Assembly: GCA_035221665.1 (NCBI GenBank)
Contig: CM069147.1
Location: forward strand, 25,482,001-25,546,000
Length of the DNA: 64,000 bases
Direction: 5' to 3'
Source of the DNA: Okamejei kenojei
Taxonomy: Eukaryota
Within the stretch, counting starts at the first letter, position 1. Every line of letters starts with the position of its first letter. Below, one piece after another: positions 2,305 to 45,726 of the stretch. A program made the translations under genes and the position numbers. Under the pieces are notes generated by a model that saw only the letters and a program-made list of their open reading frames with translations, searched no databases and was not told where the DNA came from.

Positions 2305-2427
2305 CTATTTTAAAGTCTTGATTCCTGCATATTCTATTACATCATTCTTCGCCGTTCTTGGATCTTTCGGAGAAGCGTGGAGATCCAGAGTCGTAAAGGT
2401 CAATTTATTTTCAGACACCTCTTTGAC
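2305..2427 (-). CDS. Gene B terminal cytoplasmic exon: VKEVSENKLTFTTLDLHASPKDPRTAKNDVIEYAGIKTLK*
   Basis: Acceptor ttttttcgatag|GTC, phase 0, open to TAG. Contains IEYAGI (ITIM-like) and LTFTTL (ITIM position with Phe). Aligns with the last exon of gene A. Confidence 0.85.
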   Translation of the reverse strand, partial: VKEVSENKLTFTTLDLHASPKDPRTAKNDVIEYAGIKTLK

Positions 2428-2524
2428 CTATCGAAAAAATAATCAGAGATCATGAGCTGCCGATTCGCCTATATGGGCGCCGTACACGAATTTTCCTTGG
2501 AGCACCTTTCCACTTATATCTTAC

Positions 2525-2611
2525 CTGGGCATAGAGGGTTTGTTTTTCGTGCTGTCTGTTTTTCTCAGTTTTCTTCTGTCCGCTGAAGTTCAAATCTGTG
2601 TACGTTGGATT
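2525..2611 (-). CDS. Gene B cytoplasmic exon: NPTYTDLNFSGQKKTEKNRQHEKQTLYAQ
   Basis: Acceptor gttccctcag|AAT, donor CAG|gtaaga, 87 nt, phase 0-0. Motifs PTYTDL and TLYAQ|V are 23 residues apart, as in gene A exon 6. Confidence 0.85.
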
Positions 2612-3372: not shown

Positions 3373-3431
3373 CATCAAGAAATGTTCTTGTTTTTCAAAG
3401 TAGTGGGTTATGTCCTCAATATTTTCTGGGG
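3373..3431 (-). CDS. Candidate gene B short phase 1-0 exon: (A)PENIEDITHYFEKQEHFLM
   Basis: Acceptor tttatgttctctgctag|, donor ATG|gtatta. The phase matches gene A exon 5, but there is no sequence similarity to confirm it. Confidence 0.35.
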
Positions 3432-5644: not shown

Positions 5645-5926
5645 CGATTCCAGGAAATCTGTGAGTTTCAATGGTCGGAAACAGGAGGGTGACGTGAAAC
5701 ACGTGGCAACTATAAACAGATCGGCTATCTACTGCATGCAGGAAGCTGGAAGCAAGGTATAATCCCTCGTCGTTCCGTATTTTAGTGGTATTTATTCCAG
5801 AAATGATTGCTTGGTCATCTTTATACCAGGTAAGTTCGCAGTTCTCCGGGAAAAACGGAGCAGTTGTGCAGTTTAGGGCCAAGGAAGGAGTGTTCATCTG
5901 TTTAATCTTCAAAGGCGTCGGCGGCA
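5645..5926 (-). CDS. Gene B Ig C1-set domain exon
   Basis: Acceptor ttgtctacag|TG, donor G|gtatga, 282 nt, phase 1-1. VPPTPLKI...LNCTTAPFFPENCELTWYK...EGLYLASSFL...VYSCHVFH carries the C1 hallmarks CxxxxF[FY]P, W and YxCxVxH, and resembles gene A C1 (VPSPLKI...CRTAAFYP). Confidence 0.9.
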
Positions 5927-7613
5927 CTGTAGACAATATAAGACAAATAAGTTAGTACCCCTATATGTTTATTTAGAAGACAACAAAATCGCTTTCGAAA
6001 TGGATAATACCATACATTCTTGGGCGTTCCTTAAATAGTAAAGTATTTCAGCTACGTTGTTGGAAACATATAGTACAATAAACCGTCGTTATAACGCAGT
6101 GGGACAGAACCACTTTATCTGATGTCACCACCTATCACTTTCCCAAACGCATTCATTCAGTCCATGCGACGAATGGAGAAACTATCCGCATGGACGGTTG
6201 AGTCTGGGTGAGCCAAGCCTCTGTGAAATATAGCACAGAGCATTCGGTCATCCCTCTTTGATAAAGCTACCTGCCTCCGAGATTTCCTTGTCATGGGGTG
6301 ATTCTATTTTTTTTGTGCTACACAGTTTTAATTTATTATCACGTGTACCGAGCCACAGCGAAATGCTTTTTGTTGTGTGTTATTCAATCAGCGAAAATAC
6401 TACACATGATTACACTCAAGCCGTCCACATTGTACAGATTCAGGATTTCTGGAGTACGTTTAGCTCAAAATAAAGTCCAGTAAAGTCCGATAAAAAGATA
6501 GTTTGAGAATCTCCAGGAAGGGTAGATGGCAGGACTTGATCTCTCTCTGGTTGGTGACAGGATGGTTTTGGGTACCTGCTGGGAAAACAACGTTGCTACA
6601 CCAGACAAAGCAGAGTTCAAGGTGGTACAATCAAATGGAAAATTGCGTTAATTAAATCCTAAATTTAGTTATTTTTGTATCTTATGTAAAATATTCTGAA
6701 AGAGAGAAGCAGGTTTATGTATACGTGAGTCTTGTGATGGACAACGTGCAGAATAATTTGCACGTTTGACATAATGTGCAGTCTCTAGTGTTGCACGGAA
6801 AATAAATAAAGTTTTGAGCGAAAAGGGCAGTTTTAGGAGCACCAATAAACAATACTGGGAAACCGTGGGAAGATCCGAACAAGTTTGAAAAGGTTCTGTA
6901 TTTAAGATGAACTTTTAAAAGTAGTCTGATGAATTTTAATAGGATAAACGACAAAGACACCTTAGTTTTAGTGTACATAATAAAGGTAAAAAGGGAACAC
7001 GGGTGGCAGGCAGCGGGGTGGGGGTGGGGAGGGGGGCAGTTAATTTAGAATGTGGTGATGCGAGTTTACAGTTGTGTCTTACAATGGAATATATCTAGAG
7101 ACGTCGAGCATCGATGAAACCAAAACATCACATTAAAAGTGTGTATCAACAGAGGAATAGCATGTAAAGACCTATATGAAGACTGGTGGATGACTAATAT
7201 TGTGGCTATATTTGAGAAGGGCTGCAAGAAAAATCCTGGGAACTGTAAACCAGTCGGTGGTAGGAAGGCCACTGGAAAGGATTCAGAGGGTAAAATATGT
7301 ATGCATTTGATTAAAAATGAGCTGATCGAGAAGGGGGGGGGGGTGATTTAATAGAATGAAATGTTTAGCAACAGCCATTACTTAACACCAAATAGGACAC
7401 CATCTATAAAGACAAAGGAGCGTCACCATTATGCCCCCGTCCACGTAACAAAAGCATTATCTCCACATCGGTGAGTAAATCGTTGATCTCCATCCCAAAC
7501 TGATCTAAGCAAATGCTCTCACCAGAGAATTTCCGGGGATCTTTCACAAGTAGTGATCGGAAATGTGCTGGAAGCAGAGCTAATCAGACCGTGAAAAATA
7601 AATTCAATAAACA

Positions 7614-10187
7614 CTTTTAGGGGTGTACTATAGACCGCCAAATGGGGAGCGAGAATTGGAAGAGCAAATATGTAAGGAGATAGCAGATATTAGTAGTAAG
7701 CACAAGATAGTGATTGTGGTAGATTTCAATTTACCAAAAATAGACTGGGAAACACATTCTGTAAATGGGCTGGATGGTTTGGAGTTTGTAAAATGTGTGC
7801 AGGGTAGTTTTTTTGCAGCAGGTATCGACCAGAGAAGGGGCAGTGCAGGACCTCCTGTTAGGAAATGAGGCAGGACAGGTGACGGAGGTATGCGTTGGTG
7901 AGCACTTCGGGACCAGTGATCACAATACCATTAGTTTCAATATAATTATAGAGCGAGTCAGAACTGGACCTAGAGTGGAGATTTTTGATTGGACAAAGGC
8001 TAACTTTGAGGGAATGCGTAAGGATTTTAAAGGAGTGAATTGGGACACTTTGTTTCATGGGAAGGATGTAGAAGAGAAATGGAGGACATTTAAAGGGGAA
8101 ATTGTAAGAGTACAGAATCTTTATGTCCCTGTTAGGTTGAAAGGAAATAGTAAACATTGGAAAGAGCCATGGTTTTCAAGGGAAATTGAACACTTGTTTC
8201 GAAAAAAGAGAGATATCTACAATAATTATAGGAGGCATGGAGTAAATGAGGTGCTAGAGGAGTATAAGGAATGTAAAAAGAATCTTAAGAAATAAATTAG
8301 GAAGGCTAAAAGAAGATATGAGATTGCTTTGGCCAGAAAGGTGAAAGTAAATCCAAAGGGTTTCTACAGCTATATTAATAGCAAAAGGATAACGAGGGAT
8401 AAAATTGGACCATTAGAGAACCAGAATGGACAGCTATCTGCAGAGCCAAAAGAGATGGGGGAGATATTGAACAATTTCTTTTCTTCGGTATTCACCAAGG
8501 AGAAGGATATTGAACTCTGTGAGGTAAGGGAAAAAAGTAGAGTAGCTATGGAAACTATGAGATTCAAAGAGGAGGAAGTACTGACACTTTTGAAAAATAT
8601 AAAAGTGGACAAGTCTCCAGGTCCTGACAGGATATTCCCTAGGACATTGAGGGAAGTTAGTGTAGAAATAGCAGGAGCTATGACAGAAATATTTCAAATG
8701 TCATTAGAAACGGGAATAGTGCCGGAGGATTGGCGTACTGCGCATGTTGTTCCATTGTTTAAAAAGGGTTCAAAGAATAAACCTAGCAATTATAGACCTA
8801 TTAGTTTGACGTCAGTGGTGGGCAAATTAATGGAAAGGATACTTAGAGATAATAAATATAAGGATCTGGATAAACAGGGTCTGATCAGGAACAGTCAACA
8901 TGGATTTGTGCCTGGAAGGTCATGTTTGACAAACCTTCTTGAATTTTTTTGAAGCGGTAACTAGGGAAATTGATGAGGGTAAAGCAGTGGATGTTGTCTA
9001 TATGAATTTCAGTAAGGCCTTTGACAAGGTTCCCCATGGAAGGTTGGTTCAGAAGGTTCAACCTTTGGGTGTTAATGGCGGAGTGGCAAGATGGATTCAA
9101 CAGTAGCTGAATGGGAGATGTCAGAGAGTAATGGTGGATGGCTGTTTGTCAGGTTGGAAGCCGGTGACCAGTGGGGTGCCTCAGGGATCTGTGTTGGGTC
9201 CACTGTTGTTTGTCATGTACATCAATGATCTGGATAATGGGGTGGAAAATTGGATAAGTAAGTATGCAGATGATACTAAGATAGGTGGTGTTGTGGATAA
9301 TGAAGTAGATTTTCAAAGTCTACAGAGAGATTTGGGCCATTTGGAAAAGTGGGCTGAAAGATGGCAGATGGAGTTTAATGCTGATAAGTGTGAAGTGCTA
9401 CTTCTTGGCAGGACAAATCAAAATAGGATGTACATGGTAAATGGTAGGGAATTGAGGAATGCTTGTGGAACAGAGGGATCTATGAATAACTGTGCGTAGT
9501 TCCCTGAAGGTGGAATCGCATGTAGATAGGGTGGTAAAGAAAGCCTTTGGTGTGCTGGCCTTTATAAATCAGAGCATTGAATATAGGAGTAGGGAAGTAA
9601 TGTTAAAATTGTACAAGGCATTGGTAAGACCAATTCTGGAGTATGGTGTACAATTTTGGTCGCCTAATTATAGGAAGGATGTCAACAAAATAGAGAGAGT
9701 ACAGAGGAGATTTACTAGAATGTTGCCAGGGTTCCAGCAACTATGTTACAGAGAAAGGTTGAACAAGTTAGGTCTTTATTCTTTGGAGCGCAGAAGGTTA
9801 AGGGGGGACTTGATTGAGGTCTTTAAAATGATGAAAGGGATAGAAAGAGTTGACGTGGATATGCTTTTCCCATTGAGGGTAGGGAAGATTCAAACAAGAG
9901 GGCATGACATGAGAATTAAGGGACAGAAGTTTAGGGGTAACGTGAGGGGGAACTTCTTTACTCAGAGGGTGGTGGCTGTGTGGAATGAGCTTCCAGCAGA
10001 AGTGGTGGAGGCAGGATCGATTTTAACATTAAAAGTAAAGTGGATAGGTATATGGACGTGAAGGGAATGGAGGGGTATGGTCTGAGTGCAGGTAGATGGG
10101 ACTAGGGGAAAACAAATGGTCGGCACGGACTGGAAGGGCCGAGAGGGCCTGTTTCCGTGCTGTAATTGTTATATGGTTATATGGTTA
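7614..10187 (+). mobile_element. CR1 LINE, 5'-truncated, disabled ORF2 (endonuclease + RT)
   Basis: ORFs 7623-10061 give VDFNLPKIDW, SDHN, KSPGPD, NYRPISLTS, GVPQGSVLGP and YADD, broken by stops and frameshifts. (GTTATATG)n-type tail. Confidence 0.95.
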
Positions 10188-16619: not shown

Positions 16620-17630
16620 AAAACATGAAGATCTGGGAACTTGAGGGCAATCAATGGAAGTGTCTTGAGGGCAATCTGTATTACGATAGAGGTGCTCAAC
16701 GTCCTAAAGTGTAAAAGGTGGAGAAATCCTCCGGGCCTGATCAGATTTATCCGAGGGCACCGCGGGAAACTAGAGAAAGCATTGCAGGTGATCAGGCTGA
16801 GATATGAGTCATTATTAAATATGGGTGAGGTTTCGGAAGAATGCAGGGTGGCAATTGTGTCCGTAGGAACTAGAGCTGCTGGTTCAAAGCGAAGATGGAC
16901 ACAAAATGCTGAAGTAACTCAGCGGAACGGACAGCATCTCTGGAGAGAAGGAATGAGCGACGTTTTGGGTCGATACTCTTCTTCAGAGGGTTTGGAGTGG
17001 AGGGTTCTGAATTGTGATGTGCCTCCAGGATCGGTGCAGGGCCTATTGCTGTTTGTGGATTACTGTATATCAACGATTTGGATGAGAACATAGAAAGCCG
17101 GATTAGTTATTAGATTGCAGGTGACTGTTAATTTGGTAATATGTAGATAGCGAAAATGGTTATCAAAAGTTACAGCAGGATCTTGTTCAGTTGGGCAAGT
17201 GGGCTGATGAATAGATAATGAGTTTAATGCAGGTAAGTGTGAGGTTTTGTATTTTTGGAAGTGAAATGTGGGCAGGACCTTAATAGTAAATGGCAAAACG
17301 TTTGTAGAGCAGAGGGGTCAATGTGTGCTGGTACAGTACATAGTTCCTTGAGAGTGGTGTCACATGTAGACACGGTGGTTAAGAAGGCTTCAGGCCTTTA
17401 TCAGTCAGGGTAATGAGTATAGAATCCGGGATGTTATGTTATAAATATATAAGTATCGGGGGAGCCGTTTTCCACATGATAGTGGGGATATGAAATGAAC
17501 TGCCAGATGAGGTTATTGAGGCTGAAATTACAACAACATTTAAAGGACATTTGAACAGGACATGGATGGTTTTGGAGACCAAACGCGGGCAGATGGGACG
17601 TATGCAAATGGGACACCGTTATCGGCATGA
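16620..17630 (+). mobile_element. Degenerate CR1 RT fragments with an internal Penelope-terminus insertion
   Basis: Remnants of SPGPD, GVPQGSV and MEFNAGKCEV in shifting frames. Confidence 0.7.
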
Positions 17631-22400: not shown

Positions 22401-22520
22401 CAGGGCTGTGGAATCAGAGTGGATTCGTCGATTCGGAGTCGGGGCAATTTTGTTGCTGCTGGAGTCGGAGTCGGAAAAAAAGTCCCGACTCCGACCTCCA
22501 CGTAAATGTCAGAGACTACG
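22401..22520. mobile_element. MITE-like end with GGAGTC/GACTCC subterminal repeats (second reading ~33462-33562)
   Basis: CAGGGCTGTGG start followed by ggagtcggagtcgg and inverted ccgactccga. Confidence 0.5.
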
Positions 22521-27503: not shown

Positions 27504-27576
27504 CCCCTCCATCCACCCCACCATACCCCCCCCCCCGCCCCCGCCCCCCGCACAACCCCCCCTAGATCCGCACATG

Positions 27577-33500: not shown

Positions 33501-36500
33501 CGGGGGCAATTTTTGTGCTGTGGAGTCGGAGTCGGAAAAAAAAAGTCCGACTCCGACTCCAAGTAAATGTCTGAGATAAGCTAAATCATCGAAAATCCAA
33601 CTTTTCTCTAAAAACATGGCCTCCATATAACTCCCCCCCCCCCGCACCCATTTTTCCATGGACATGGAAACATATTTGATGACAACCAGCACCCCCAGCA
33701 TGTACTACGGGAATCACTAAACATCGGGATAATCTATATAGCGCAGCAGTGCTGTGAGAATCAAGTGCGCAAGGGCGTGCGTTACAGTTGTTGCCTTACA
33801 ACGCCAGAATCGGGTTCGATCTGACTACGCGTGCTGTTATTAGAGGATTTTGTTTACGGTTCTCCCCGTGACCAGGTGAGTTTCCTCGAGATCTTCGGTT
33901 TCCTTACCCCCCTGCAAGAGTATGGTTTTTAGGGTTAATTGGTTTGGTTACAATGTAAATTGTTCCCTATGTGTGTATGGTAGTGTTAAGGTGTGGTGGT
34001 CGCTGGTCGGTGCGGGCTCGGTGGGCCGAAGGGCCCGTTTCTGTTATTTAAAATTCCGAATTATTAATCAGAATTTAACTTTCCTTGTCGGACTTCAATC
34101 TTCGCACAGGTTTGCGGGTTCCATGTTACTTTCGCGATTAAAAACCACTGTTCCACCTTTCTGACAAGGATTTAACTACCGTAGGCAAAAAGGCCGATAC
34201 GACCGATGTTATTTGTTTGGATCTTTATGAAGGATAATAAAAAAAATATCACGGAGACTAATATATTTCGAATGTAAACAACACGCGTTAGCATGAATAG
34301 TCAATTTGTACATTTTATTTACGTAAATTATATCTTAATAAACCTGTCCAACAATAGGTAGATGCAAAATGCTGGAGAAACTCAGCGGGATAGGCAGCAT
34401 CTCTGGAGCGAAGGAATGGGTGACGTTTCGCGTCGAGATCCTTCTTCCGACCTTCTTCGACCCGAAACGTCACCTATTCCTTCGTTCCAGAGATGCTGCG
34501 TGTCCCGCTGAGCTACTCTAGCATGTTGTGTCTACCTTTGATTTAAACCAGCATCTGCAGTTCTTTCCTCCACATTATGTTCAGCTATATATACGGCCTG
34601 TGCATAATACCTGTAATTCAGACATTTTAATTAGAACTATGGAAATGACGAGGACGAAACCGGTCTCACGAATCGACTCAAATCTTCAAGATCGACTCAT
34701 TCGAATTAGTGGCAACATATTTATCGTTGTTTCAACAGAAATGCCATGGAGTCGCAGACTTCACAATTTGCTAGCCCGACAGCGTTGACAATGGAGCACG
34801 ATTTATTCAGTGGCACTATGGCATTGTCTTCGTATGTGGACTGCCAACAGGATTATGTCGACTTCCAACACGTTTAGGGTGGCACAGACTACGCCTGACT
34901 GTGCCAGAGACGCGGGCTCGATCTTGAAGACGGGCGATGTCTGCATGTTCTGACTGTAATCGTTGGGTTTTCCCCGGCTGCTCCGTTTTCGTCCCACATC
35001 CCAAAAGGCTTGCAGGTTTGTAGGTTAATTGACCTCTGTAAATTGTCCCTGGTGTGTAGAAGAGAAGCAATGTACAGGTCGTTGGTCGGCGCGCTCGGTG
35101 GCCTGAGAGGTCTGTTTCCACGCTGTATCTAAGATAATCTAAACTAAGATCGGAGCGGTAAAATAAAATTACGAGAACGGGACGGAGCCTGTGCGTAATG
35201 CAATAAATCACATTGAAGCGGAGAGCAACATACTCTTCACATGGATAACAAGGAAGGGAGTAAGTAAATTAAACATTTTGTCCTGTGTGTATTATATTAT
35301 TCATGTGGAAAAATGTGTCAAGAATTATAAATAATTGCTTAGTATCACGGTAGTGGAAACTGGGAACATCGAAACAACCCCTCCCCAATAGTAAGGAGAA
35401 GCTATGTCGAAGTAGATCGTTTATCGAGGTTTAATACGAACCAATTCTATTTGTACTGAAATAAAATTCCATGGATTTTGAATAGATCTGGAAAAACTGT
35501 AAATGTATTGACTGTAAAGACAAGAGTGGCACAACTAGGAGGAAATATTGGTGTTCTTTGTCAACGTTATTGGGAATGTTCAAATCCACTACCGATTAAA
35601 GAGTTGCGGGACTTTGATGAAACTACAAGTCTATCAAGACTCCGTGAGTTTATGTAAAACACACATATTTTGATACATTTTCTAGCATCATTTCACAATG
35701 TGAATAAAAGGGAACTCTGAGAACCTGTATATGGATATCCTAAAGCACTTCATAGTATTCCCTCCAAAAGATATGTGATCAAGATAGGAACACGCGAACG
35801 TGTTTTCGATATAATTTATAAAGAAATGGTGCTCTAGTGGTTAATTATCTGAAAAGGGCAATGGGAAGAAATAGATGATTGCCAGGTTGACTAACAACGA
35901 ATGGCGGAATGCCACAGCAAGGTACTCAGGCATAACTATTTAATCCATAGTTATGTCGTGATGGACTATATAAAAACAAGAGGTGATCATATTGAAATAT
36001 ATAAATCCTCCGGGTTGTGGGCGGTCGGGTTTATTGCGGGAACGTACTTTTCAGTTAGGGTTTCTAGAACGAAATTTAAGGAAACCAAAGGGTGGAACAC
36101 ACACTAAACAGAAAAGAGAAGGATTGGGGTGGGCGTTATTGAATGTATACAAGGCAAAATCTGAGGGGGAAACGAGAGCTTTGAGGATCATTTAAGGGAA
36201 AAAGAACAGAAAACCGGCGTTTGAAACCAAGATTGGTTCATTCATGGCCTTATCAAATTCTGGAGGGGGAAGGGGCAATTTTCTTATTTGGCATCTTATT
36301 TATTTAGATCCTCCCACGAGGATGAAAATCGGGAAATGATCGAAGTGCGGACTGTTTGATGTCCTCAAATAAAAGAGCCTTCTATTTCCTGACTCATTTT
36401 CCGCCTATATTAACAGTAGCAATGTTACAAAATTATGAGATTTTTAAAATCAAGTCCGCAATTTATCCCATCAGATAAAACATAACAATAAGTTTAATTT

Positions 36501-37890
36501 GACACCTAATTCACTTTTATATCTTCAGCATTAAAAAGGTTATGGCCATTTTCATACTCGGAAATTTGCAAATTGTTCCCTATTGTTTTTCCATTGACTT
36601 AACACAAAAGCTGTGATCGAGGACAGTCAAAAGCCCATAACTTTCTTAAAGATTAAGAGAACTGAATGGCATTTTCAGTTATGATATATTGATGCATTCT
36701 GAAACGAATATAAAACATCTTACTTGGATGACCCGAAATGAAAGCATATAATTAGTTAGTTACCTAATTATAGTTAATTTGCAAAATCGACCGTTGTGAC
36801 AAAAATAGTAATAAACACCCAGACTGCCTTGAAAATTAAACAAATTGATATTCTCAAGATCAGAACTTTAAAATTATTGTATTATATGCTGTAAGTCCGT
36901 AACAGATAGGTAAATAAATTACAATTTCTATCCATAGAGCAAGTCTTTAAGGAGGAGATCAGTTGCTAGCATACATTGGCATATTACAATCAGTAGCATC
37001 ATCATATTCCTCAGATTGTAAGCAATAAGCAACTCTGTACATCTTGTTTTTCCTCAACTTTTCAATTTTGGCATTGTAAACTATAAGTTTTTGCTCTTCA
37101 AACCACACATGAAATGCCTTTCTGCCCATTGCTTTCCCATTAAGAATGTCCTGTAGATTCAATTTCTTAAAATGATTTTTTTTGATAGCCTAAGTAACCA
37201 AATAACAAACGAATTCCATTCACACAAGAATTCACAATATAACATGATTTTAAAATCTCAATATCATTAATTCAAATGTCAGATGGAAGGAATTTGATGT
37301 TTAATTCCCATAAATGTATCTAGAAACAGCCACTCAATATATATTTTTTTACACAATACATGGGACTAAAACTGATATTTAGTATAAAATTATTGGCTAT
37401 GGGTAGACAATAACAGGACAAATAGACGATTTAGATGCTCTTATGACATGATTGTCCAAAAAAAAGAGCATTTAAATCATCTTGGAGTGGGATTTTCTGG
37501 AACGCGATCGATTGGAACGTTGCATTTGCGGTGAATTTTAACCCCATATCGGCGGGAAATACACTGCCGGTTCGGCCCATATCACATTTTCGCAACGTAA
37601 AATTAGATTAAAGCCATCCCAAGAAGCAAGATTATATGTAAAATATACGACATACCCTTTATTTTGTCCCGTTCTTGCGATCCGTCACGTTGTAGGCGTT
37701 GAGGGCATTAGAAGTCGCTTTGTATTTTAATCAAGTTATTAAATTGTCTCGCGCTTAAAAAAAATCGGGAACGGAAGTCGGATCGATTATTCTTCAGCCC
37801 GAGGAAATCCGCCTCCGACAGGCAGGAGAAAACTGGATTTTAATCCCGCCCCCCACCCCCCCCCCCCCCCCCCCCCCCCCCCTCCCCTCA
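27577..37890 (+). repeat. Copy B of the ~10.2 kb direct duplication
   Basis: Collinear with 16780-27000. Differences are mainly 1-bp indels plus G/T-rich garbled stretches at ~29200-29580 and ~32100-32300. Confidence 0.95.
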
Positions 37891-38057: not shown

Positions 38058-38112
38058 ATGTTTCTGAAAGTGTCACCTTGGACGACGTATTTCCTTGGAA
38101 TTTTGAATGCGG
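38058..38112 (+). CDS. Gene A exon 1, leader MFLKVSPWTTYFLGILNA
   Basis: ATG, moderately hydrophobic core and phase-1 donor G|gtacac (weak consensus), 293 bp before the V exon. Confidence 0.6.
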
Positions 38113-41100
38113 GTACACTACGGCTTCTATTGCTTTTTACTTATGGGTCTTCAAAATACCCAGATATTATAGTTGTACCTTATAATGTCATGCTGAATTG
38201 TCCATAAGGTCATGGCTGTTGTATGGGTTCTGGAAAGGAGTGTAATTTACGAAAACTTTACGAGGACACAAATAGCGGGCATAATAATGCGGTTCAATTC
38301 ATTGTAAATATTTGGTCTGAGTGCAATAAGATTTTTGCCAGCAGTGTTTAATTTCCATTGCTGTGCATCAATGACTAAACTGGATTGTGCACCATCTATT
38401 GACAGCTGCTGTGAACAGGTCGGGCAAGACGATATCGAATGTTGTTCAGAAGCCGGTGATCAGTGGCATAAACTTTACCTGTCGGTGTCCCTTCCCCTTC
38501 AATGTAAATGTTTCACACCTAACGGTTTTCTGGTGGAAAGATGGAATTAAAGGCTTCCTGAAAGAAGATAGCAGGAAAATCATCATGATAAGGGCAGGAG
38601 GCGCCTACCTTCACCTGCTGAATGTCACGGTCTCGGACGCCGGAACATACAATTGTCTTGCAAAAGAAGCGGGCCGAACGGTCGCGGAGGGAACAAGAGA
38701 GCAACTTGTCGTATATGGTGAGCGAACGGTTCTTTAGTTGCAGCTCGAATTTGAATTTTCCTTCACAAAAATCTTTAATCCAGAATACAAATGTGCAAAA
38801 CGTTGAAAAATTATTCTAGATTGATTCGTTTGCAAACATAGGTCAGAGGGCATAACAGCAATGATATTTGAGTAGATATATATTGAAGGTAGTGAGTGTA
38901 AGATGAATACATACAACGGTTTCAATTTGACACTGAACGCCGAGGCAGGGATCCTCCTGATGTTTTCCTAATGATAATGTTATCAACACATAATCCTGTG
39001 AATTGAAAGAGCGAGGTTTTTACTTCAACAAAATAATTGAAATACAAATTATATTTCTTGCGCCGAATTAGAGAAACAAGAAATTTTAGTCAAAGCATTC
39101 TCTGTAAGCCAGTCAATGCCTGCAACTGTTTATGACTGATTATATTGGGAAATTTTCATATTCACAAATGTACTGTGCCTTTGAAGAGTTGAAACTTGAA
39201 AGTTGATTCGCGCATGTGAGCACAAGAAACAAGTGTGCAAATTGGGGGAGCCGATTACGATGAATTACACCTTCATCTGGGCTCCCAAATTAAAAATTAT
39301 GATGGAATTAAGTAGCGTTGGAACAAATGTTATTGGTTGATATAATCGACGTTTCCCCTTTCTTTTAATTCTATTCCTCTTTACTTAGCCGTCCCTTCTC
39401 CTCTGAAGATTGTATCTGTTCGATCTAGAAATGCTGCGACTCATTTCCTGAAAATCCAGTGCAGAACGGCTGCCTTTTACCCGAAAGAATTTAATCTCAC
39501 CTGGCACAGAAATGGTTCCTTCATCCAATCTGGATTTCGGCATGAACAACATTTAACGGCAGACGGATTGTATGAAGTTATCAGCTCTTTACATGAGAAA
39601 CGGGCAGTCAAAGAAGGAACCGTTTACACATGTAAAATGATTCACCGTTCTATGCTAACTCCAGCAACTGCCAACTACACGGTTCCTCATGAAGGTAACG
39701 TGTCCCACGCATAGTATAATGGATAGCCCACTGAATAATAATATTAATGGTAAAAATAAAATGTGAGGATATTTAAAATACCGTATTTTCTGCAGCAAAT
39801 TAATTTTCCTGGAAGTTGTGCAATTTTCATATTTTTTGCCAGCGTAGACAGACGCTGTACAGTCCATCCAGTCTATGTTGCCTCCCAAAAGATTCCATCA
39901 ATACCGTTCCTGCAATCGATCGCGCACCTGTAGCCCATTCCCTTTCACGTGATCTACAAGTCCACTCTGATGCCCCCACAAACATCACACATTCCCGAGG
40001 GATAATGTAAAAATAATCAATTAACTCACCAAGCAGTTCCTTGGTAAAATCTAAGAGACTGTGCAATGTGCATGCAGACAGTTCCCGAAGCCAGACCTGA
40101 GCTCGGATACCTGGAGCTATGAATCGATAGCACTATTGCTGCACCATTAACTCGGTGAAGGTTTTGTTTTTGTTCGTTTATGGCTGAAATGTGTAATCAA
40201 TTGCAACTCAGACACCGAGACTACCTAAAAATAATCTGCGCAAATACCGAAATATGAAGTACTCCTCCTCCAATTTGTCTGTGGCCTCACGCTGGTAACG
40301 CAGGATGGCCAGAACAGAAAGGTCAGTGTGCGAATGGGAAAGTGATTCTGAATAGTTAGCAACCGGGAAATCCAATAGGCCTTGGCGGACCTCGTGCATG
40401 TTTTCAGCTAAACGGCCGCAGAATCTACCTTTATCTCGTTATTGTACGGTATCCCGCGTCAGGAACACTGGATGCTGTAGATAAGGTGATGGGAGGTGGG
40501 TGAGGGAGGGTGGAAGGATGGGGGGGAGGGAGGGAAGGGGGGGGGGGGGGTTGGTGTCACGTTCACTAAAGAATGAGAGCAGGGTGGAAGTTAGTGGAGT
40601 ACTTAATGAGGCCATAAGTTCTGCACGAGTGCAGGAAGTAGCTCCAGCGTAGTTGTCGATGTATTCGAGAAGGAGTTCGGGGATAACGCCAGCGCATGTT
40701 TTGAACAAACACTGCACCATGTAACCAACAAAATGGTAGCCAGTAGCTGTGGCTGATGTGAGCGTCCATGCTGCAACTTTAACTTGGAGAAAGTGAGAGG
40801 AGTCAAAAGAGACGTTGTTGAGGGTGACGACAAATTCCTCTAGACATAGGAGATTGTTCGTAGAGAAAAATATCTTTGGTCTCTTTTCAAGGAAGAAACT
40901 GAGGTCATGAGATTGTCCTGCTCCTAACCACTCTACACCTACTACAGACGTCAGAGGTCATGGGGAGAAGGCGGGAGAATGGGACATGGAGTGATAGATC
41001 AGCCATGATTTAATGGCGGAGTAGACATGAAGGGCCGAATTGCCTAATTCTCCTATCCTTATGACGTAAATACCCCTCCTCCGCCCGCCCATGCACAGCT

Positions 41101-44100
41101 TCTTCCAACCCCTCCTCTCTGAAGCCCTCTGGCCCCCACGCCCGAGCCTGCTTCTGCACCTCTGCTCGCCCCTGACCTCAGCCGTCACCCCTGTCATGTT
41201 TTCAACACCCCCTGGCCTCCTTTGCGATACCACCGGCCAGTCCTCGACAATTAGTGCTACATCCTACACCCGTGTAGAACTCAACTTCACCACTAATTTC
41301 CACCCTGCCCTCAAATTCATATGAATCTCTGATACCACTCTATCCTTCCTTTCTGTCTCTCCATTCGCTCCACCAGCCACCGCAATCCTAAACATCATCT
41401 TCGGACATTTCCGACGCCTCCAACCTGATCCCATTATTAACCACATATTTACATCTCCATGCCTTGCCGACTTTTGCCGACTGTTCCTCCACAACTATGG
41501 TTCATTCATCCCTTTAAACCCAGACCACCCCATCCCGAGGTACTTTCTCTACTACTGCAGGAGATGTAACACCTGTCTCTGTACCTTCTTCCTCGCCACT
41601 ATGCACGGACTCCGACAGTCTTTCCAGGTTGGACAGTAGTTCACATGCACCTTCTCTAATCTTATCTACTGCATCCGATGGTTTGGATGCGGGGTGCTGT
41701 ACAATAGTGTGAAAAGCTGTGGATTTTGCGGCCATTTAGCTGAGCATGCTCAGATCTACTGGATCTCCCATTAGCTAAGTATTTTAATTCCTTTTTTATT
41801 CCTACACTGACCTTTCTGTCCGAGGACCTGCCTTGCACAGAGTGGCGAAAGCAAATTCGACCAGCAACACGTCATATTTCACTTGTATGGCATACAAGCC
41901 AGCGGCATGAACGTTGAATTCTCTAATTTTAGTAATGTCCACAAACACTCACCTCCCTCTCCTCTCCCTCGCCCCCGCCCCCTTCCATTTGCCCCCTTTC
42001 ATTTTCTAAATGTCGATTAACCAGTCCCACAATTCGCAACGATGTACCCCCCTTGGGATAACGTCGTTCCTAACCAACAGTTCCTATCAGGGAACCTCCC
42101 TGCGTGGGGTCAAATCGTGCTAATCCCGATTTCTCCTGTTTCTTGCTTCAGCCCCCCCCCCCCCCCCCCCCCCCCACCCACACCATCAGTCTGAAGAAGT
42201 GTCCCGACACAAAACGTCACCTCTCCATTTTCTCCAATGATGCTGCCTGACCCGCTGAGCTACGCCAGCATTTTCAGTCTATCCATGAGAACTAACTTGT
42301 TGGTTCTTGCATTAATTGGGGACAGTTAGTGGGGAGAAGACGTCAGTAATGATTCACTGCTGGCCAGCGTCAGTAACATTAACATCTCCTTCAAGATTTG
42401 GTGAACAGGAGATATCCAAATTAATGTATTATGTTCCACAATTTTCTGTTTCCTAACGGTCAATATTCCACAAAGTTCACTTAAGATCTATTTATTTCAC
42501 TCCTAATCGCGCCATAAATCGAAATTGTTGGCTCTTTGCCGCCTTCCACGCGGTTCTGGTGAAATCCATTGAGTGAACATTTGAAATATCTTGCTTTGTT
42601 TTCCTGCAAAGTCTACTTTGAAATAACTCAATTAAATATAAACATTTGGTCATCGGTTTAACCTCCCACAGCTGTCGAGGGTTTATCTGCTTCTCTAATC
42701 GCTGGAAGTATCGGAGGTGCAGTGTTAATTTTAATGTTCATCGTTATCGTCGTGATGACAATTATATTTAGAGGTATGTTTCTCATCCATTTTTTTAACA
42801 TTGTCTTCCCAGTATAACATTATAATATAATAGTATTTGGTAATCGTCACAATAAAGGAAATGAAACATTTGCACGGGCAAAAATTATGATTATAATAAA
42901 CAGCACCGACTTAACGAAGATATTCAATTTTGCCTGCGACTAATGTTTGATGATCACATATTTTGAATTCTATGTTTTATTTCGAAACATCATTACATAG
43001 CAGCCAGCATTTAATTGTACCTATTGGTCAAGATCTGCACATCTGTGAACATCTGTGAATTTTGCGTCCATCGATCATCCGTTCACACTAGCTCTACGTT
43101 AACCTACTTTCGCATCCACTCAATACAGTGGGGGCAATTTGCAGAGGTCAATTAACCACACATCCGCACATTCTTGGAATGTGGGTGTATACTGGAGCAA
43201 CGGGTGAAACGGACGTGGTCACAGGGAGAACGTGCCTCAAACTCCGCATTTTCCTGCTGCACCACTGTGTCGTCCAACATTTTGGAAAAAGCGTGGCAGA
43301 AACAACGAGGTTTAAGCCTTCGTGCATATGTAGTGAAGCCGTATATAGTGAAATTCGATCGTGGAATTATCACATGATATTACGTTCTTGGCGTGCTAAC
43401 AGGTCACCACGTCGCACGGACATTTATCACTATTTTGTTTTTCCGAGCAGGTGCAAAGAAGCGTACAGTAAATACAAATCGGACACAAAGTTGGGTAAGG
43501 CTTATTTAATAAATGACTATTCAATTTGTGAAAGTTGAGACAGGATTGTGCCTTTGTTGAAACCAAGCTGTTTTAATAAAGACCACGTCTTATTCTGTTT
43601 GAACATTCCCAGTCAGTAAAGTTCACAGTACATTACAAAGGAGGACATAAAGAACAATACAAAATGCATTTACAGGAGTTCTCATTTATGATATATATCA
43701 TAAGTATTGTTTACACCAGGTGTAGTGAAAGGAATATTTTCATTGCACCTTACAGCTTTTGTCCAGCCTCAGGCGAGATTCCGGAGTACTGGAGAGTGGC
43801 CATGTTGTTTCTTTGTTTAAGAAGGGAAGTGAATGGAATCCAAGGCTCAGCCAGTTGGATATAAATATAGGTCGGTTAACCACACGTTAGTGGTTGGGAA
43901 CCGATTGGAAAGACTTCTTCAAGAGAGGATCTACAGACATTTGGAAGAGAATGGACGAATTGGCGATAGCCAGCACGGCCTAACATGTTTTACTGATGTA
44001 ATTGAGTTTTCTGAACAGATGACAAAGGAGATTGATGAAGGCTGGGCAGTAGCTGCTGCAAACACGAATCTAAGGAAGGCTTGTGATAAAGTCCCTCGTG

Positions 44101-45726
44101 ATAGGTTGATCCAAAAGATCAAGATATGCAGGATCCACTGTAACGTGGTGATATTAATTCAGAACTGGCTTCTTCAGAGCGACAGAGGTTGGTCGAAGGA
44201 AGATCTACCCGAAGGTCTGTGATCAGTGGAATTCCACAATGACCTCTGTTATTTGTGATATATATAAATTACGTAGACATAAATCTAGATGGGTTGTTCA
44301 GTAAATTTGATGAACAGCAGAACAGGAGGAGTTGCAGACAGCGAGAAGGGTTGTCAGAAGATACAGACGGTTATAGATAATCGACAAAAGTGGGTGGACA
44401 AATGGCAGATGGAGCATGATGGAGTATAACCCGAGCAGTCTGAGCTGTTGCACTTTAGGGTGGCGCATGTAAGGATAATGTCAATATGCTAAAGTGAATT
44501 GATGTGCAGGGAGGTCATGGAATCCAAGTTCATAGCTCACTGAAGACGGCAGCATGAAGAGATAGGCTGGTGAAGATGGCGTATGATATGTTTGCCTTCA
44601 TTGCTGCGGCATTGAATATAAAAGTCAATAAATCATGATACAGCTCTCTAAGACTATGGTTAAGCCCCATTTGGAGTTTTCCGTGCGGTTCTGGTAGCCT
44701 CATTACAGAAAGCCTTTGGGGAGGGTGCAGAAGAGGTTTACCAGAAGCGCTTGGATTAGAGAGGGTGAACGAAGGGGTTGTATAAACTTGGATAGTTTTT
44801 TGCTGGAAATTCGGGGCATGAGGGCAGAATTGATAGAATGAAAGGCATAGATAGGGTAGACCGTCAGAACCTTTTCCACAAAATCGAAATGTCCAATGCT
44901 AGAGGGTATAGCTATAAGGTGTGTGGGAGAATATTTGACGGATGTATACGGGGTAAGTTCTTTACATAGCTATTGTTGTTTGCCTGGAAGGCATTACCGG
45001 GAGTGGTGGTGGAGGCAGACACAATAGTTGCGTTTAAGAGGCATTTAGATGGACATATGCACAATGGAAAAAGGGATATGGATCATGTACAGATAGATCA
45101 GTTTAACGTGGCATCGTATTCAGCACAAACATTTTGGGCCGAAGGGCGTGTTCCTATGCTGTACTGTTCTATGTTCCATATTATGTGCAGTTATCATTTT
45201 GATCTGTCCAATTGCCCCACAGTCGATTAGACTCTGGAAATTGGTCTTCGTGCGAGAAGTCATTCGACACAAAACGAAAAATATTCGTCCCTCGTTTATT
45301 CTTGCAAGTGCATTTCACGCAAAAGCTTCATTTGTGGTATAATTAATTTTAAAATGTTCATGAATTTCCAGGAAGAAGGTGAGAACGTTAGTGGCAATCT
45401 GATGTACGCCCATTTGGATCTTGTTCGCAGCAAAGAATATGGGAAACCTGAAGAGCACGTGGAGAGGCCTGTGTATGCAAAGGTAAAGTACGTTTCACGC
45501 ATTCACTCTACACATTTGAGAATACAGATACGTCTTACTCGGAAAAATTAGACGTTTTCTTGTCCAATTAACAATAGCAAACATTTGTGCACAGATCGCA
45601 ATTATGGCTGCTGCTGAGAACGAACTGGCATACGCTCCCTTGAACACGTCAAGCTCGAAAAATATTTTGAAACGGCAAAATAAAGAAATAAGTGTAATAT
45701 ATAGCGCGGTGAAAAATAACAACTAA
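38058..45726 (+). CDS. Gene A, spliced: SIRP-alpha-like inhibitory IgSF receptor (leader-V-C1-TM-4 Tyr motifs), 353 aa. join(38058..38112,38406..38717,39389..39694,42672..42773,43451..43494,45372..45482,45595..45726)
   Basis: All introns are GT-AG with compatible phases (1,1,1,1,0,0). The joined CDS is 1062 nt with no internal stop and shows recognisable V, C1, TM and ITIM modules. Confidence 0.85.
38406..38717 (+). CDS. Gene A exon 2, Ig V-set domain with in-exon J-like G strand
   Basis: ttgacag| acceptor, G|gtgagc donor. FTCRC, VFWWKDG, LHLLNVTVSDAGTYNC, AEGTREQLVVY. Confidence 0.92.
39389..39694 (+). CDS. Gene A exon 3, Ig C1-set domain (absent from the ORF track)
   Basis: ctttacttag| acceptor, G|gtaacg donor, 306 nt. 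VPSPLKIVSV...IQCRTAAFYPKEFNLTWHRNG...DGLYEVISSL...VYTCKMIHRSM. Confidence 0.92.
40300..40900 (-). mobile_element. Penelope-like retroelement fragment
   Basis: Minus-strand translation PELLLEYIDNYAGATSCTRAEL resembles the PLE RT YIDD region. Related to 58255-58340. Confidence 0.65.
41230..42285 (+). mobile_element. Penelope-like retroelement fragment (RT C-terminus, GIY-YIG remnant, terminal repeat)
   Basis: NFHPALKF, FTCTFSNLIYCIR and a terminal ctgaagaag...aaacgtcac segment. Confidence 0.65.
42672..42773 (+). CDS. Gene A exon 4, transmembrane: AVEGLSASLIAGSIGGAVLILMFIVIVVMTIIFR
   Basis: cctcccacag| acceptor, G|gtatgt donor, phase 1-1, long uncharged hydrophobic stretch. Confidence 0.9.
43451..43494 (+). 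CDS. Gene A exon 5, juxtamembrane: GAKKRTVNTNRTQSW
   Basis: tttttccgagcag| acceptor, TGG|gtaagg donor, phase 1-0, basic stop-transfer residues. Confidence 0.75.
43755..45175 (+). mobile_element. Old degenerate CR1 LINE in gene A intron 5
   Basis: YRSVNHTLVVG, DSQHGL, RKACDKVPRDRL and WQME remnants, plus a CR1 3' tail (gttctatgtt). Confidence 0.8.
45372..45482 (+). CDS. Gene A exon 6, cytoplasmic, LMYAHL and PVYAK|I
   Basis: aatttccag| acceptor, AAG|gtaaag donor, 111 nt, phase 0-0. Confidence 0.88.
45595..45726 (+). CDS. Gene A exon 7, cytoplasmic, LAYAPL and VIYSAV, stop TAA
   Basis: ttgtgcacag|ATC. IAIMAAAENELAYAPLNTSSSKNILKRQNKEISVIYSAVKNNN*; aligns with the gene B terminal exon. Confidence 0.85.
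   Translation: MAIMAAAENELAYAPLNTSSSKNILKRQNKEISVIYSAVKNNN

What the first reader, a model, noticed from the sequence alone, without database searches (positions are those of the whole stretch)
2305..45726. Divergently oriented paralog pair points to a birth-and-death receptor cluster
Seen: gene B (-) and gene A (+) point away from each other. They share a C1 exon starting VP-x-PLKI and two ITIM exons separated by a homologous short intron (97 vs 112 bp), yet their proteins are quite diverged. Inference: an old tandem family of inhibitory receptors that may extend beyond this window and may include activating partners with a charged TM, as in SIRP, NITR and KIR/LILR clusters.
Basis: partly seen in the sequence, partly recalled or inferred. 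Interest (0 to 1): 0.75.

Follow-up and report, generated by a model that had tools for sequence, protein, structure and literature searches.

The report
Skate SIRP-like gene plus decayed neighbour
One intact gene for an inhibitory, antibody-shaped immune receptor lies head-to-head with the broken remains of an old relative; both belong to a shark-and-ray gene family known so far only from automatic annotation, so this is an ordinary case of gene gain and loss.

Summary
Gene A (+) and gene B (-) point away from each other. They share a C1-set exon starting (V)P-x-PLKI and two tyrosine-motif tail exons split at the same phase-0 point by a short intron (112 and 97 nt).

Gene A is an intact seven-exon V(J)-C1-TM receptor gene of 353 codons. 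This includes a 44-nt juxtamembrane exon (43451-43494) that I found here.

Gene B is not a whole gene. Only its C1 exon and two tail exons are clear, plus a weak juxtamembrane trace. No leader, V or transmembrane exon is detectable.

Both belong to a family of shark, ray and chimaera proteins that RefSeq names inconsistently ("SIRP-alpha-like", "tapasin-related-like", "uncharacterized"). A and B fall in two different old subfamilies, each holding both sharks and rays.

The family holds long-tailed inhibitory members and short-tailed members with a charged transmembrane segment. That part of the "birth-and-death paired-receptor cluster" reading is supported at family level. This window holds only one live gene and one relic, and I could not read the flanks.

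The assembly gaps lie in a poly-C tract between two copies of a 10.8-kb intergenic duplication and touch no exon.

The scan had already found this family on other DNA of this genome. No RNA evidence.

The parts
38058..38112 (+). Gene A exon 1: start codon and signal peptide (MFLKVSPWTTYFLGILNA, ends in phase 1)
   Evidence: Read from the DNA. GT donor and phase checked. The leader matches those of the Pristis, Hemitrygon and Mobula relatives P0165-P0167. The donor context is weak.
38406..38717 (+). Gene A exon 2: V-type Ig domain with a built-in J-like end (..AEGTREQLVVY), 312 nt, phase 1-1
   Evidence: Pfam Ig_3/I-set/V-set hits, all below the curated cut-offs. Family V HMM E = 7.5e-25. 55% identity to horn-shark P0060. 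AG/GT checked.
39389..39694 (+). Gene A exon 3: C1-set Ig domain, starts (A)VPSPLKI, 306 nt, phase 1-1
   Evidence: Pfam C1-set 3.8e-9. Family C1 HMM 5.1e-36. 57% identity to P0024. The best PDB hits are Ig constant domains, with SIRP-gamma at 5e-8.
42672..42773 (+). Gene A exon 4: stalk and transmembrane helix with no charged residue in the core, ends ..IIFR|G in phase 1
   Evidence: Hydropathy 3.07. Splice sites. Aligns with the TMs of P0032 and P0086. A contig of an independent DNA sample covers it with one E-to-D change.
43451..43494 (+). Gene A exon 5: 44-nt juxtamembrane exon (GAKKRTVNTNRTQSW), phase 1 to 0. It links the TM exon in frame to the tail exons.
   Evidence: Top candidate of 5 in a splice-site and phase enumeration of the 2.6-kb intron. 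Acceptor tgtttttccgagcag and donor TGG|gtaagg. It aligns right after the TM of P0163 (0 of 500 shuffles reach the score), P0060 (3 of 500), P0160 (24 of 500) and P0158 (46 of 500). It does not align with P0159 (313 of 500) or P0086 (357 of 500).
45372..45482 (+). Gene A exon 6 (tail exon 1): 111 nt, phase 0-0, with NLMYAHL ... RPVYAK|
   Evidence: Same 37-codon cassette size as the exon skipped in horn-shark isoform P0153. tblastn to family tails gives E = 6.8e-5.
45483..45594 (+). Gene A short intron, 112 nt, phase 0, inside the second tyrosine motif
   Evidence: Does not align with B's intron.
45595..45726 (+). Gene A exon 7 (tail exon 2): |IAIM..LAYAPL..VIYSAVKNNN, then stop
   Evidence: tblastn to P0086 and P0060 tails gives E about 5e-4.
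5645..5926 (-). Gene B C1-set exon, starts (V)PPTPLKI, 282 nt, phase 1-1, AG/GT intact, no stop
   Evidence: Pfam C1-set 2.7e-10. Family C1 HMM 5.1e-30. 51% identity to Mobula birostris P0039. The second-best PDB hit is UrIg2. Coordinates.
3373..3431 (-). Possible relic of gene B's juxtamembrane exon (..APENIEDITHYFEKQEHFLM), phase 1 to 0, weak donor
   Evidence: Enumeration. Local alignment to P0039 is reached by 6 of 300 shuffles, but to P0045 by 62, P0152 by 40, P0099 by 135 and P0161 by 200 of 300. This is a hint only.
2525..2611 (-). Gene B tail exon 1: 87 nt, phase 0-0, NPTYTDL ... QTLYAQ|. It is 8 codons shorter than the family's 37-codon cassette; a stop lies 5 codons upstream of the exon's first codon in the same frame.
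   Evidence: tblastn to P0128 gives E = 2.6e-4 and to P0045 gives E = 6e-5.
2428..2524 (-). Gene B short intron, 97 nt, phase 0, at the same place as in A
2305..2427 (-). Gene B tail exon 2: |VKEVSENKLTFTTL..VIEYAGIKTLK, then stop. The third tyrosine is replaced by Phe.
   Evidence: Weak tblastn match to P0161 (E = 0.54).
16782..37776 (.). Intergenic direct duplication: copy 1 at 16782-26763 and copy 2 at 27581-37776 (76-88% identity). Copy 2 ends about 280 nt before gene A's ATG. It carries no family exon.
   Evidence: Self-blastn. Family HMMs and tblastn found nothing there.
26764..27503 (.). Assembly gaps (135 N and 500 N) with a 105-nt island between them. The flanks are a poly-C tract homologous to 37818-37890 at the end of copy 2. 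This is the joint of the two copies.
   Evidence: The ORFs that the ORF listing draws across the gaps are runs of X plus Pro/Gly from poly-C/G.
7139..10061 (+). LINE reverse-transcriptase ORFs, inserted where B's V exon would be expected (about 1.2-4 kb upstream of B's C1 exon)
   Evidence: ORF translations. Related to the LINE at 53941-56261. Naming them a LINE reverse transcriptase is my reading of those translations; no family scan was run on them.

Best explanation
The window comes from a cartilaginous fish. Its closest protein relatives are from batoids, and earlier notes call it a skate. It holds two members of a chondrichthyan family of non-rearranging V(J)-C1-TM receptors that resemble SIRP-alpha.

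Gene A is an intact seven-exon gene: leader, V with built-in J, one C1, an uncharged TM, a juxtamembrane exon and two tail exons. Its tail carries four tyrosine motifs in two pairs. Inferred, not shown: after tyrosine phosphorylation the motifs recruit SH2 phosphatases and damp cell activation, as SIRP-alpha does.

Gene B, 32 kb away on the other strand, is what is left of a member of a different old subfamily. Its C1 exon and two tail exons still have open frames and splice sites. Its leader, V and TM exons are gone, its first tail exon is shortened and one tyrosine has become Phe, so it cannot make a membrane receptor.

The pair therefore shows both halves of birth-and-death evolution. The family elsewhere holds both inhibitory and charged-TM (activating-type) members.
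For: - Gene A model: seven exons, AG/GT at all six introns, phases consistent, 1062 nt, 353 codons, no inner stop.
- The juxtamembrane exon was found by enumeration and fits relatives at the right place.
- A's V and C1 exons are 55-57% identical to shark proteins. The leader matches batoid relatives.
- A and B C1 exons are homologous (E = 3e-13). The tail exons have the same layout.
- Family: 949 hits at E <= 1e-3 in the exhaustive search. Source names are SIRP-alpha-like, SIRP-beta-like, tapasin-related-like or uncharacterized, in Heterodontus, Mobula, Rhincodon, Chiloscyllium, Callorhinchus, Heptranchias, Amblyraja, Carcharodon, Scyliorhinus, Stegostoma, Hemiscyllium, Pristis, Hemitrygon and Cetorhinus.
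- Tree: family clade of 91 rows (97), A clade of 16 rows (96), B clade of 11 rows (97).
- B's missing exons: family V HMM finds only A's V exon (next best E = 0.55). tblastn with 78 proteins and with 6 B-type V domains (best E = 0.63) finds none.
- No hydrophobic exon lies between B's C1 exon and its first tail exon. That 3-kb interval has no N.
- DNA runs of two samples hold 82-87% of the sampled words of 2200-6100.
- Both receptor types exist in the family.
- Full-length relatives P0060 and P0039 align with a rodent SIRP-alpha through C1, TM and all four tail tyrosines (E 1e-10 to 1e-12).
Against: - No RNA evidence. No listed run is on record as RNA for B's region.
- The three possible RNA runs (flagged 'probably DNA' or a guess) had zero depth over A's C1, juxtamembrane and tail exons.
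- A's leader donor is weak. Two of six relatives do not support the juxtamembrane exon.
- The only three exonic differences in a second individual are all amino-acid changing (E227D, G281A, L283P). L283P removes the -2 Leu of the first ITIM. This could mean relaxed constraint, though three sites are too few to tell.
- B's V exon could in principle lie in the unread gap.
- B's C1 exon shows no sign of decay, so its loss of function may be recent, or B may be used in some way I cannot see.
- The tree is a quick search on 102 columns with many unresolved forks.
- Function is inferred from motifs only.
Confidence: 0.75

Rival explanations
1. Gene B is an intact receptor gene, and its V and TM exons are missing only because of assembly error or the unread gap.
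For: An assembly gap of unknown true length lies between B and A. B's three clear exons keep open frames and AG/GT sites. The C1 exon keeps both cysteines, the Trp and the Y-x-C-x-V-x-H motif.
Against: - The TM exon must lie between 5645 and 2611. That interval has no N and no hydrophobic exon.
- The best TM-like match is reached by 7 of 100 shuffles and a TM profile does not find it.
- Two DNA samples hold 82-87% of the sampled words of this stretch.
- The gap is 21 kb upstream, and poly-C flanks it on both sides at the joint of a duplication.
- B's first tail exon is cut short by a stop 5 codons upstream of its first codon.
Confidence: 0.1
2. A and B are a matched inhibitory/activating receptor pair, like SIRP-alpha and SIRP-beta, sharing a ligand-binding domain.
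For: They are neighbours in divergent orientation. The family holds both types. A's nearest relatives in Pristis, Hemitrygon and Mobula have an Arg in the TM and short tails.
Against: - B carries inhibitory-type tail exons, not a charged TM.
- B has no V exon to compare.
- The two C1 domains are only 34-35% identical and sit in different subclades, each shared by sharks and rays.
Confidence: 0.03
3. A and B are true orthologs or co-orthologs of SIRP-alpha of bony vertebrates. On this view the family is simply 'SIRP' and not a separate chondrichthyan family.
For: - RefSeq names many members 'tyrosine-protein phosphatase non-receptor type substrate 1-like'.
- A rodent SIRP-alpha is the only hit outside cartilaginous fish among the 18 hits of P0060 (E = 1.5e-11).
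- The alignment runs through TM and all four tail tyrosines.
- Lungfish and coelacanth SIRP-like C1 domains are the sister group of the family clade (SH-aLRT 82; names).
Against: - A has one C1 exon where SIRP-alpha has two (the SIRP-alpha layout is from P0171).
- Support for the sister grouping is below the star threshold.
- The mammalian SIRP-alpha C1 sits on a long branch elsewhere.
- Identity is only 21-30%.
- Synteny could not be looked at.
Confidence: 0.35

Closest known systems
Mammalian SIRP family (SIRP-alpha inhibitory, SIRP-beta activating through an Arg/Lys TM, SIRP-gamma)
   Same: - N-terminal V domain with a J-like last strand, followed by C1-set domains and a single TM.
- A tail with four tyrosines in two YxxL...YAxV/I pairs.
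- Family members with a charged TM and a short tail.
- The relatives align to a rodent SIRP-alpha through the whole tail.
- RefSeq's automatic names point the same way.
   Different: - One C1 domain instead of two.
- Only 21-30% identity.
- The V domain is short, 59 residues from Cys to Cys, and by sequence scores best with I-set domains in PDB.
- The ligand is unknown.
- Orthology is not established.
[quoted passage not shown] 2019). I saw this paper only as a reference inside PMC10751288; its features are recalled.
   Same: As recalled: non-rearranging VJ plus C1 plus TM genes, closely linked, one with ITIM and one with a charged TM.
   Different: Not compared. No PRARP sequence was on hand and the paper is not held. 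Whether the shark family is the PRARP counterpart is open.
UrIg / UrIg2, non-rearranging VJ-C1 antibody-like genes of elasmobranchs (PMC10751288 and PMC12227049, passages read; PDB 9dmx)
   Same: A non-rearranging V(J) exon followed by C1-set domains in cartilaginous fish. UrIg2 is the second-best PDB hit of B's C1 exon (E = 5e-11, summed over three domains).
   Different: The PDB entry title for UrIg2 is V-C1-C2-C3; its abstract says the amino-terminal domains make homodimers and the C2-C3 part resembles IgG Fc. A has one C1, a TM and an ITIM tail. PMC12227049 holds neither 'SIRP' nor 'ITIM' (0 occurrences each).
NITR (teleost) and KIR/LILR (mammal) clusters
   Same: Multigene families with inhibitory (ITIM) and activating (charged TM) members that evolve by gain and loss. 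This is a likeness in function and evolution, and it is recalled.
   Different: Domain types differ. A and B have C1-set domains. As recalled, NITRs have V plus I-type domains and KIR/LILR have C2-type domains.

Membership tests
Chondrichthyan SIRP-like V-C1 receptor family (automatic annotation only) | C1-set exon beginning (V/A)P-x-PLKI that falls inside the family clade | tested here: met
   A and B are both inside the 91-row clade (SH-aLRT 97). Family C1 HMM gives E = 5e-36 for A and 5e-30 for B.
Chondrichthyan SIRP-like V-C1 receptor family (automatic annotation only) | Single-exon V domain with built-in J directly upstream of the C1 exon | tested here: met
   Met for A (family V HMM 7.5e-25; phase 1-1 exon). 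Not met for B: no V exon anywhere in the window.
Chondrichthyan SIRP-like V-C1 receptor family (automatic annotation only) | TM exon, juxtamembrane exon and two tail exons, the first a 37-codon phase-0 cassette ending inside Y-A-x| | tested here: met
   Met for A. B has the two tail exons at the same split point but no TM exon, and its first tail exon has 29 codons.
SIRP-alpha (bony vertebrates) | Ectodomain of one V and two C1 domains | tested here: not met
   Only one C1 exon lies between A's V and TM exons.
SIRP-alpha (bony vertebrates) | Cytoplasmic tail with four tyrosines in two ITIM-type pairs | tested here: met
   A has four tyrosines, three in canonical ITIM context. The relatives' tails align with all four sites of a rodent SIRP-alpha. 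B keeps three tyrosines.
SIRP-alpha (bony vertebrates) | Orthology by tree or synteny with the SIRP locus | tested here: inconclusive
   Lungfish and coelacanth SIRP-like C1 domains are the sister group at SH-aLRT 82. The mammalian C1 sits on a long branch elsewhere.
SIRP-alpha (bony vertebrates) | Binds CD47 and recruits SHP-1/SHP-2 | not testable with these tools
   Needs binding and phosphopeptide assays.
NITR | V domain (with or without an I-type domain) and no C1-set domain | tested here: not met
   Both genes have a C1-set exon above Pfam's cut-off. The NITR definition is recalled.
KIR / LILR | Ectodomain of C2-type Ig domains | tested here: not met
   A has V-type plus C1-set domains. 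The KIR/LILR definition is recalled.
UrIg / UrIg2 | V followed by three constant domains (PDB entry title V-C1-C2-C3) | tested here: not met
   A has one C1, then TM and a tail. The likeness is limited to the C1 fold.
PRARP | Sequence kinship with the chicken PRARP genes | not tested
   No PRARP sequence or paper was on hand.

The most novel reading that the evidence does not exclude
The A-type/B-type neighbour pair is an ancient linkage block of a SIRP-type paired-receptor system that was already present in the common ancestor of jawed vertebrates. On this reading:
- The four-tyrosine tail, with its exon split inside the second motif, predates the split of cartilaginous and bony fish.
- The one-C1 shark form is close to the ancestral V(J)-C1 layout from which both SIRPs and antigen receptors are thought to derive.
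- Individual lineages have switched repeatedly between inhibitory tails and charged-TM anchors on the same ectodomain type. A here is inhibitory, while its nearest sawfish, stingray and manta relatives are Arg-TM.
Probability: 0.3. Interest if true: 0.55.

Novelty: new member of a known kind. Interest (0 to 1): 0.4.

Why it matters
Non-rearranging V(J)-C1 genes are of interest as possible relatives of the gene that the RAG transposon split to create antibodies and T-cell receptors (PMC10751288 and PMC12227049, passages read).

This family has that layout and couples it to SIRP-like inhibitory or activating signalling. It is large in sharks, rays and chimaeras. My five literature searches found no paper that describes it. 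Subscription journals and supplements were not visible.

This window adds three things:
- a clean seven-exon model, including the small juxtamembrane exon;
- a documented dead copy next to a live one;
- a hint that A-type and B-type genes have been neighbours since before sharks and rays split.

It does not add a new kind of system.

Tried and rejected
- **Word search with A's C1 exon alone:** 1 candidate, none scored. The length window of that tool excludes full-length relatives.
- **TM exon for B:** hydropathy scans at three thresholds found only a hydrophobic stretch at about 2688. It abuts the acceptor of the first tail exon in another frame and leaves no room for an intron. I rejected it.
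- **Activating-type TM relic in B at 4441-4542:** tblastn to P0080 gave E = 0.007, with an inner stop. Seven of 100 shuffles reach the score and two TM profiles do not find it. I rejected it as unsupported.
- **Juxtamembrane relic of B at 3373-3431:** supported by one of five relatives only. I kept it as a hint.
- **Three earlier ways to link A's TM exon to the tail, all rejected:**
  - Direct splicing from the good donor at 42773 to 45372 runs into a stop after two codons (read).
  - A read-through to a poor donor at 42811 (CCA|gtataa, score 2 against 6-7 for the other donors in my crude count) would be in frame but skips the basic stop-transfer residues.
  - A 'TSLHSSQH' match at 42987-43010 (E = 0.57) has no usable splice sites.
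  - All three were replaced by the exon at 43451-43494.
- **Sequence homology of the two short introns:** none beyond the splice signals.
- **Expression:** no run on record as RNA holds B's stretch. The three possible RNA runs gave nothing over A's exons. One contig per run begins at 42831, outside the exon, with 255 unmatched letters, and the remaining depth lies in bins that hold the dispersed repeats.
- **Literature:** the 'PRARP' search returned only unrelated uses of the acronym among the 15 of 106 papers listed. PMC10530332 is not held.
- **Supplements** were closed and not asked for. Gene lists in the supplements of PMC10751288 might name these genes.
- **Loci in other species:** These are same-contig records with close accession numbers: XP_067905922-24 and XP_067905931 in Heterodontus, XP_041048266 and XP_041048274 in Carcharodon, XP_043563377 and XP_043563379 in Chiloscyllium plagiosum. 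There is also one fused Hemiscyllium model (P0161) that runs from an A-type into a B-type gene. That accession order follows gene order is my assumption.
- **dN/dS on V exons** was not possible without the relatives' DNA.

Full report
**What the window is.** It is repeat-rich eukaryotic DNA. It carries LINE reverse-transcriptase ORFs at 7139-10061 and 53941-56261 and a Tc1/mariner-type transposase at 60294-61075 on the - strand. Naming these elements is my reading of the ORF translations; no family scan was run on them. There are three stretches of N: one letter at 22746, 135 letters at 26764-26898 and 500 letters at 27004-27503.

**The gaps, tested first.**
- A self-comparison shows a direct duplication of about 10 kb. 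Copy 1 is 16782-26763 and copy 2 is 27581-37776, in three blocks of 88%, 76% and 86% identity.
- Copy 1 stops exactly at the first gap.
- The 105-letter island between the gaps (26899-27003) and the first letters after the second gap (27504-27562) are poly-C. They match the poly-C tract at 37818-37890 that ends copy 2, about 170 nt before gene A's start codon.
- The gaps therefore sit in a homopolymer at the joint of two intergenic repeat copies. The first gap stands where copy 2 has about 50 letters.
- No exon of either gene is near them. They are 10.5 kb upstream of A's ATG and 21 kb upstream of B's C1 exon.
- The long 'ORFs' that the ORF listing draws across them are runs of X flanked by Pro or Gly from poly-C/G.
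- Whether the letters are continuous cannot be shown from the sequence. It does not bear on the reading frames.

**Gene A.** Reading the frames and splice sites gave a leader, a V exon, a C1 exon, a TM exon and two tail exons. However, the TM exon ends in phase 1 and the first tail exon starts in phase 0.
- An enumeration of open AG...GT segments of the right phase in the 2.6-kb intron gave five candidates. The best is a 44-nt exon at 43451-43494, with a pyrimidine tract, a CAG acceptor and a TGG|gtaagg donor.
- Its peptide supplies the basic residues expected after a TM helix.
- It aligns directly after the TM of shark relatives. The score is reached by 0 of 500 shuffles for P0163, 3 for P0060, 24 for P0160, 46 for P0158, 313 for P0159 and 357 for P0086.
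- With this exon the model has seven exons, AG/GT at all six introns, 1062 nt and 353 codons, with no inner stop.
- The tail has four tyrosines: LMYAHL, PVYAK|I, LAYAPL and VIYSAV. Three fit the ITIM pattern as I recall it.
- The joined model was checked for frame inside a script only. It was not searched. All searches were exon by exon.

**Gene B.** On the - strand there is a C1 exon at 5645-5926 (phase 1-1, AG/GT, open) and two tail exons at 2525-2611 and 2305-2427. Nothing else is secure.
- Family profiles built from the relatives find one V exon in the whole window (A's, E = 7.5e-25; next best 0.55) and two C1 exons.
- tblastn with 78 proteins of 500 residues or fewer finds no second V exon. 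Six B-type V domains searched at E up to 20 over 5901-38000 give a best E of 0.63.
- The TM exon would have to lie in the 3 kb between the C1 exon and the first tail exon. That interval has no N. Hydropathy scans and a phase-aware enumeration find none.
- A TM-like match at 4441-4542 is no better than 7 of 100 shuffles.
- A possible juxtamembrane relic at 3373-3431 resembles only the closest relative, P0039 (6 of 300 shuffles; the other four relatives 40 to 200 of 300).
- B's first tail exon has 29 codons against the family's 37, and a stop lies 5 codons upstream of the exon's first codon in the same frame.
- B's third tyrosine is Phe.
- Splicing the C1 exon directly to the first tail exon is out of frame.
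- As assembled, B cannot encode a membrane receptor. A LINE sits where its V exon would be expected.

**Are A and B related?** Yes.
- The C1 exons match at E = 3e-13, 34% identity.
- Both pass Pfam C1-set.
- The first tail exons align in register at the DNA level. I count 45 identical letters in the 87 shared columns.
- The intron cuts the same codon boundary in both. The introns themselves do not align.

**The family.**
- The word search with one exon was blank, so I ran the exhaustive search with the two C1 exons as a profile. It returned 949 proteins at E <= 1e-3, 323 at <= 1e-10 and 16 at <= 1e-30.
- Among the best 150, many are proteins of 200-420 residues with V, one C1 starting VPPTPLKI, a TM and a tyrosine-motif tail.
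- Source names for 20 of them, and for the 18 hits of P0060, include 'tyrosine-protein phosphatase non-receptor type substrate 1-like' (that is, SIRP-alpha), 'signal-regulatory protein beta-1-like', 'tapasin-related protein-like', MHC class II beta-like, 'NCR3LG1-like', 'cell adhesion molecule-related/down-regulated by oncogenes-like', 'hypothetical protein' and 'uncharacterized'.
- They come from 16 cartilaginous-fish species by my count, among them sharks, rays, a skate (Amblyraja radiata) and the chimaera Callorhinchus.

**The C1 tree** (122 rows, 102 columns, quick search, SH-aLRT only).
- The family forms a clade of 91 rows (97).
- A sits in a 16-row clade (96), nearest to Pristis, Hemitrygon and Mobula proteins.
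- B sits in an 11-row clade (97), nearest to Mobula birostris P0039.
- Lungfish and coelacanth 'SIRP-like' proteins are the sister group (82).
- Many forks are open, and long branches meet among the outgroups.
- Rows left out before the tree: proteins over 650 residues, and domains covering fewer than 80 profile positions.

**Two receptor types.** A crude script sorted the 87 database proteins of the clade as follows.

| Class | Count |
|---|---|
| Tail of 60 residues or more with at least one ITIM/ITSM-like motif | 33 |
| TM of the type R/Q...(D/E/N)H with a tail under 60 residues | 10 |
| TM containing 'WIVRG' | 3 |
| Other TMs, mostly truncated or short tails | 19 |
| No TM found (mostly fragments) | 22 |

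- Both types occur in A's clade: 6 inhibitory, 4 R...DH, 3 WIVRG and 2 other, of 15 database proteins.
- They also occur in B's clade: 6 inhibitory, 1 R...DH, 2 other and 1 without a TM, of 10.
- A's three nearest relatives are the WIVRG type, while A itself is inhibitory.

**Linkage elsewhere (indirect).**
- A-type and B-type horn-shark proteins lie on one 99.65-Mb record with accession numbers 8 apart.
- Similar near-consecutive pairs occur in Carcharodon and Chiloscyllium plagiosum.
- One Hemiscyllium model fuses an A-type gene to a B-type gene, which implies same-strand neighbours there.

**Likeness to SIRP-alpha.** P0060 and P0039 align with a rodent SIRP-alpha through C1, TM and all four tail tyrosines (E 1e-10 to 1e-12, 21-30% identity). 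The window's single tail exons give only marginal matches (E 0.005-0.05).
- A has one C1 where SIRP-alpha has two.
- A's V exon is short and scores best with I-set domains in PDB.
- I therefore file A and B under the chondrichthyan family, and call them 'SIRP-like' in how they probably work, not members of SIRP.

**Reads.**
- B's stretch is held by DNA runs of two samples of one organism (82-87% of sampled words). A second organism holds 28%. No run on record as RNA holds it.
- On A's 39650-45649, three possible RNA runs (two flagged 'probably DNA') gave zero depth over the C1 end, the juxtamembrane exon and the tail exons.
- A DNA run of another sample covered all 30 bins.
- That DNA run showed three exonic differences, each the only contig at its place. 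All three change the protein: E227D, G281A and L283P. L283P alters the -2 position of the first ITIM.

**Literature.**
- I read passages of PMC10751288 and PMC12227049. They discuss non-rearranging VJ-C1 genes (UrIg, UrIg2, NKp30, PRARP) but not this family. The word 'SIRP' occurs in neither.
- Five searches found no paper on SIRP-like V-C1 receptors of cartilaginous fish.
- This covers open-access papers and preprints only, and no supplements.

**Earlier notes of this scan.** Searches report the same family at many places in this genome. These include neighbours about 10 kb before and 18.5 kb, 193 kb and 262 kb after this window, some of the activating type. I could not test those. My own results agree with their description of the family.

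**Verdict.** The window itself shows one live inhibitory gene and one relic, not a matched pair. The family is already in the databases and in earlier reports of this scan.

Noticed in passing
window 16782-26763 and 27581-37776: A 10.8-kb tandem duplication of gene A's upstream region (76-88% identity), joined through a poly-C tract where the assembly broke. Copy 2 ends about 280 nt before A's ATG. No family exon lies inside it.
   Followed up: partly
window 45400 (also 45394 and 42679): In a DNA run of another sample, the only three exonic differences in gene A's TM-to-tail part all change the protein. T>C at 45400 turns the -2 Leu of the first ITIM into Pro, which is the state seen in B and in several B-type relatives.
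   Followed up: partly
proteins P0165, P0166, P0167 (Pristis, Hemitrygon, Mobula): A's nearest relatives carry a different TM ('..DWIVRG..', with Arg) and short tails, while A has an uncharged TM and a four-tyrosine tail. This is a switch of signalling type on one ectodomain lineage within batoids.
   Followed up: partly
protein P0161 (Hemiscyllium ocellatum XP_060693506.1): The RefSeq model named 'cell adhesion molecule-related/down-regulated by oncogenes-like' is a fusion of an A-type V-C1-TM gene with a B-type V-C1-TM-tail gene. It is probably two neighbouring genes merged by the predictor.
   Followed up: no
proteins P0025, P0046, P0058, P0080, P0083, P0084, P0110, P0151, P0162, P0164: A recurring TM type with Arg (or Gln) near the outer end and Asp/Glu/Asn-His at the inner end (R...IVDH) occurs in several subfamilies. 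I know of no adaptor for it.
   Followed up: no
window 7139-10061 (+), 53941-56261 (+), 60294-61075 (-): Two LINE elements with long reverse-transcriptase ORFs (63% identical to each other over 847 nt) and a Tc1/mariner-type transposase ORF. The first LINE lies where B's V exon would be expected. The element names are my reading of the ORF translations.
   Followed up: no
window 42774-42814: Read-through of A's TM-exon donor would add 13 codons and then a stop, giving a tail-less form. Two shark relatives (P0024, P0032) are predicted with similarly short tails right after the TM. No RNA was on hand to test this.
   Followed up: partly
window 3049-3137, 12906-13032, 14184-14455, 16867-16987, 23279-23446, 34356-34567, 42187-42274: A short dispersed repeat of about 90-130 nt (75-88% identity), sometimes as inverted pairs, occurs in many copies across the window, including B's intron and A's intron.
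   Followed up: no
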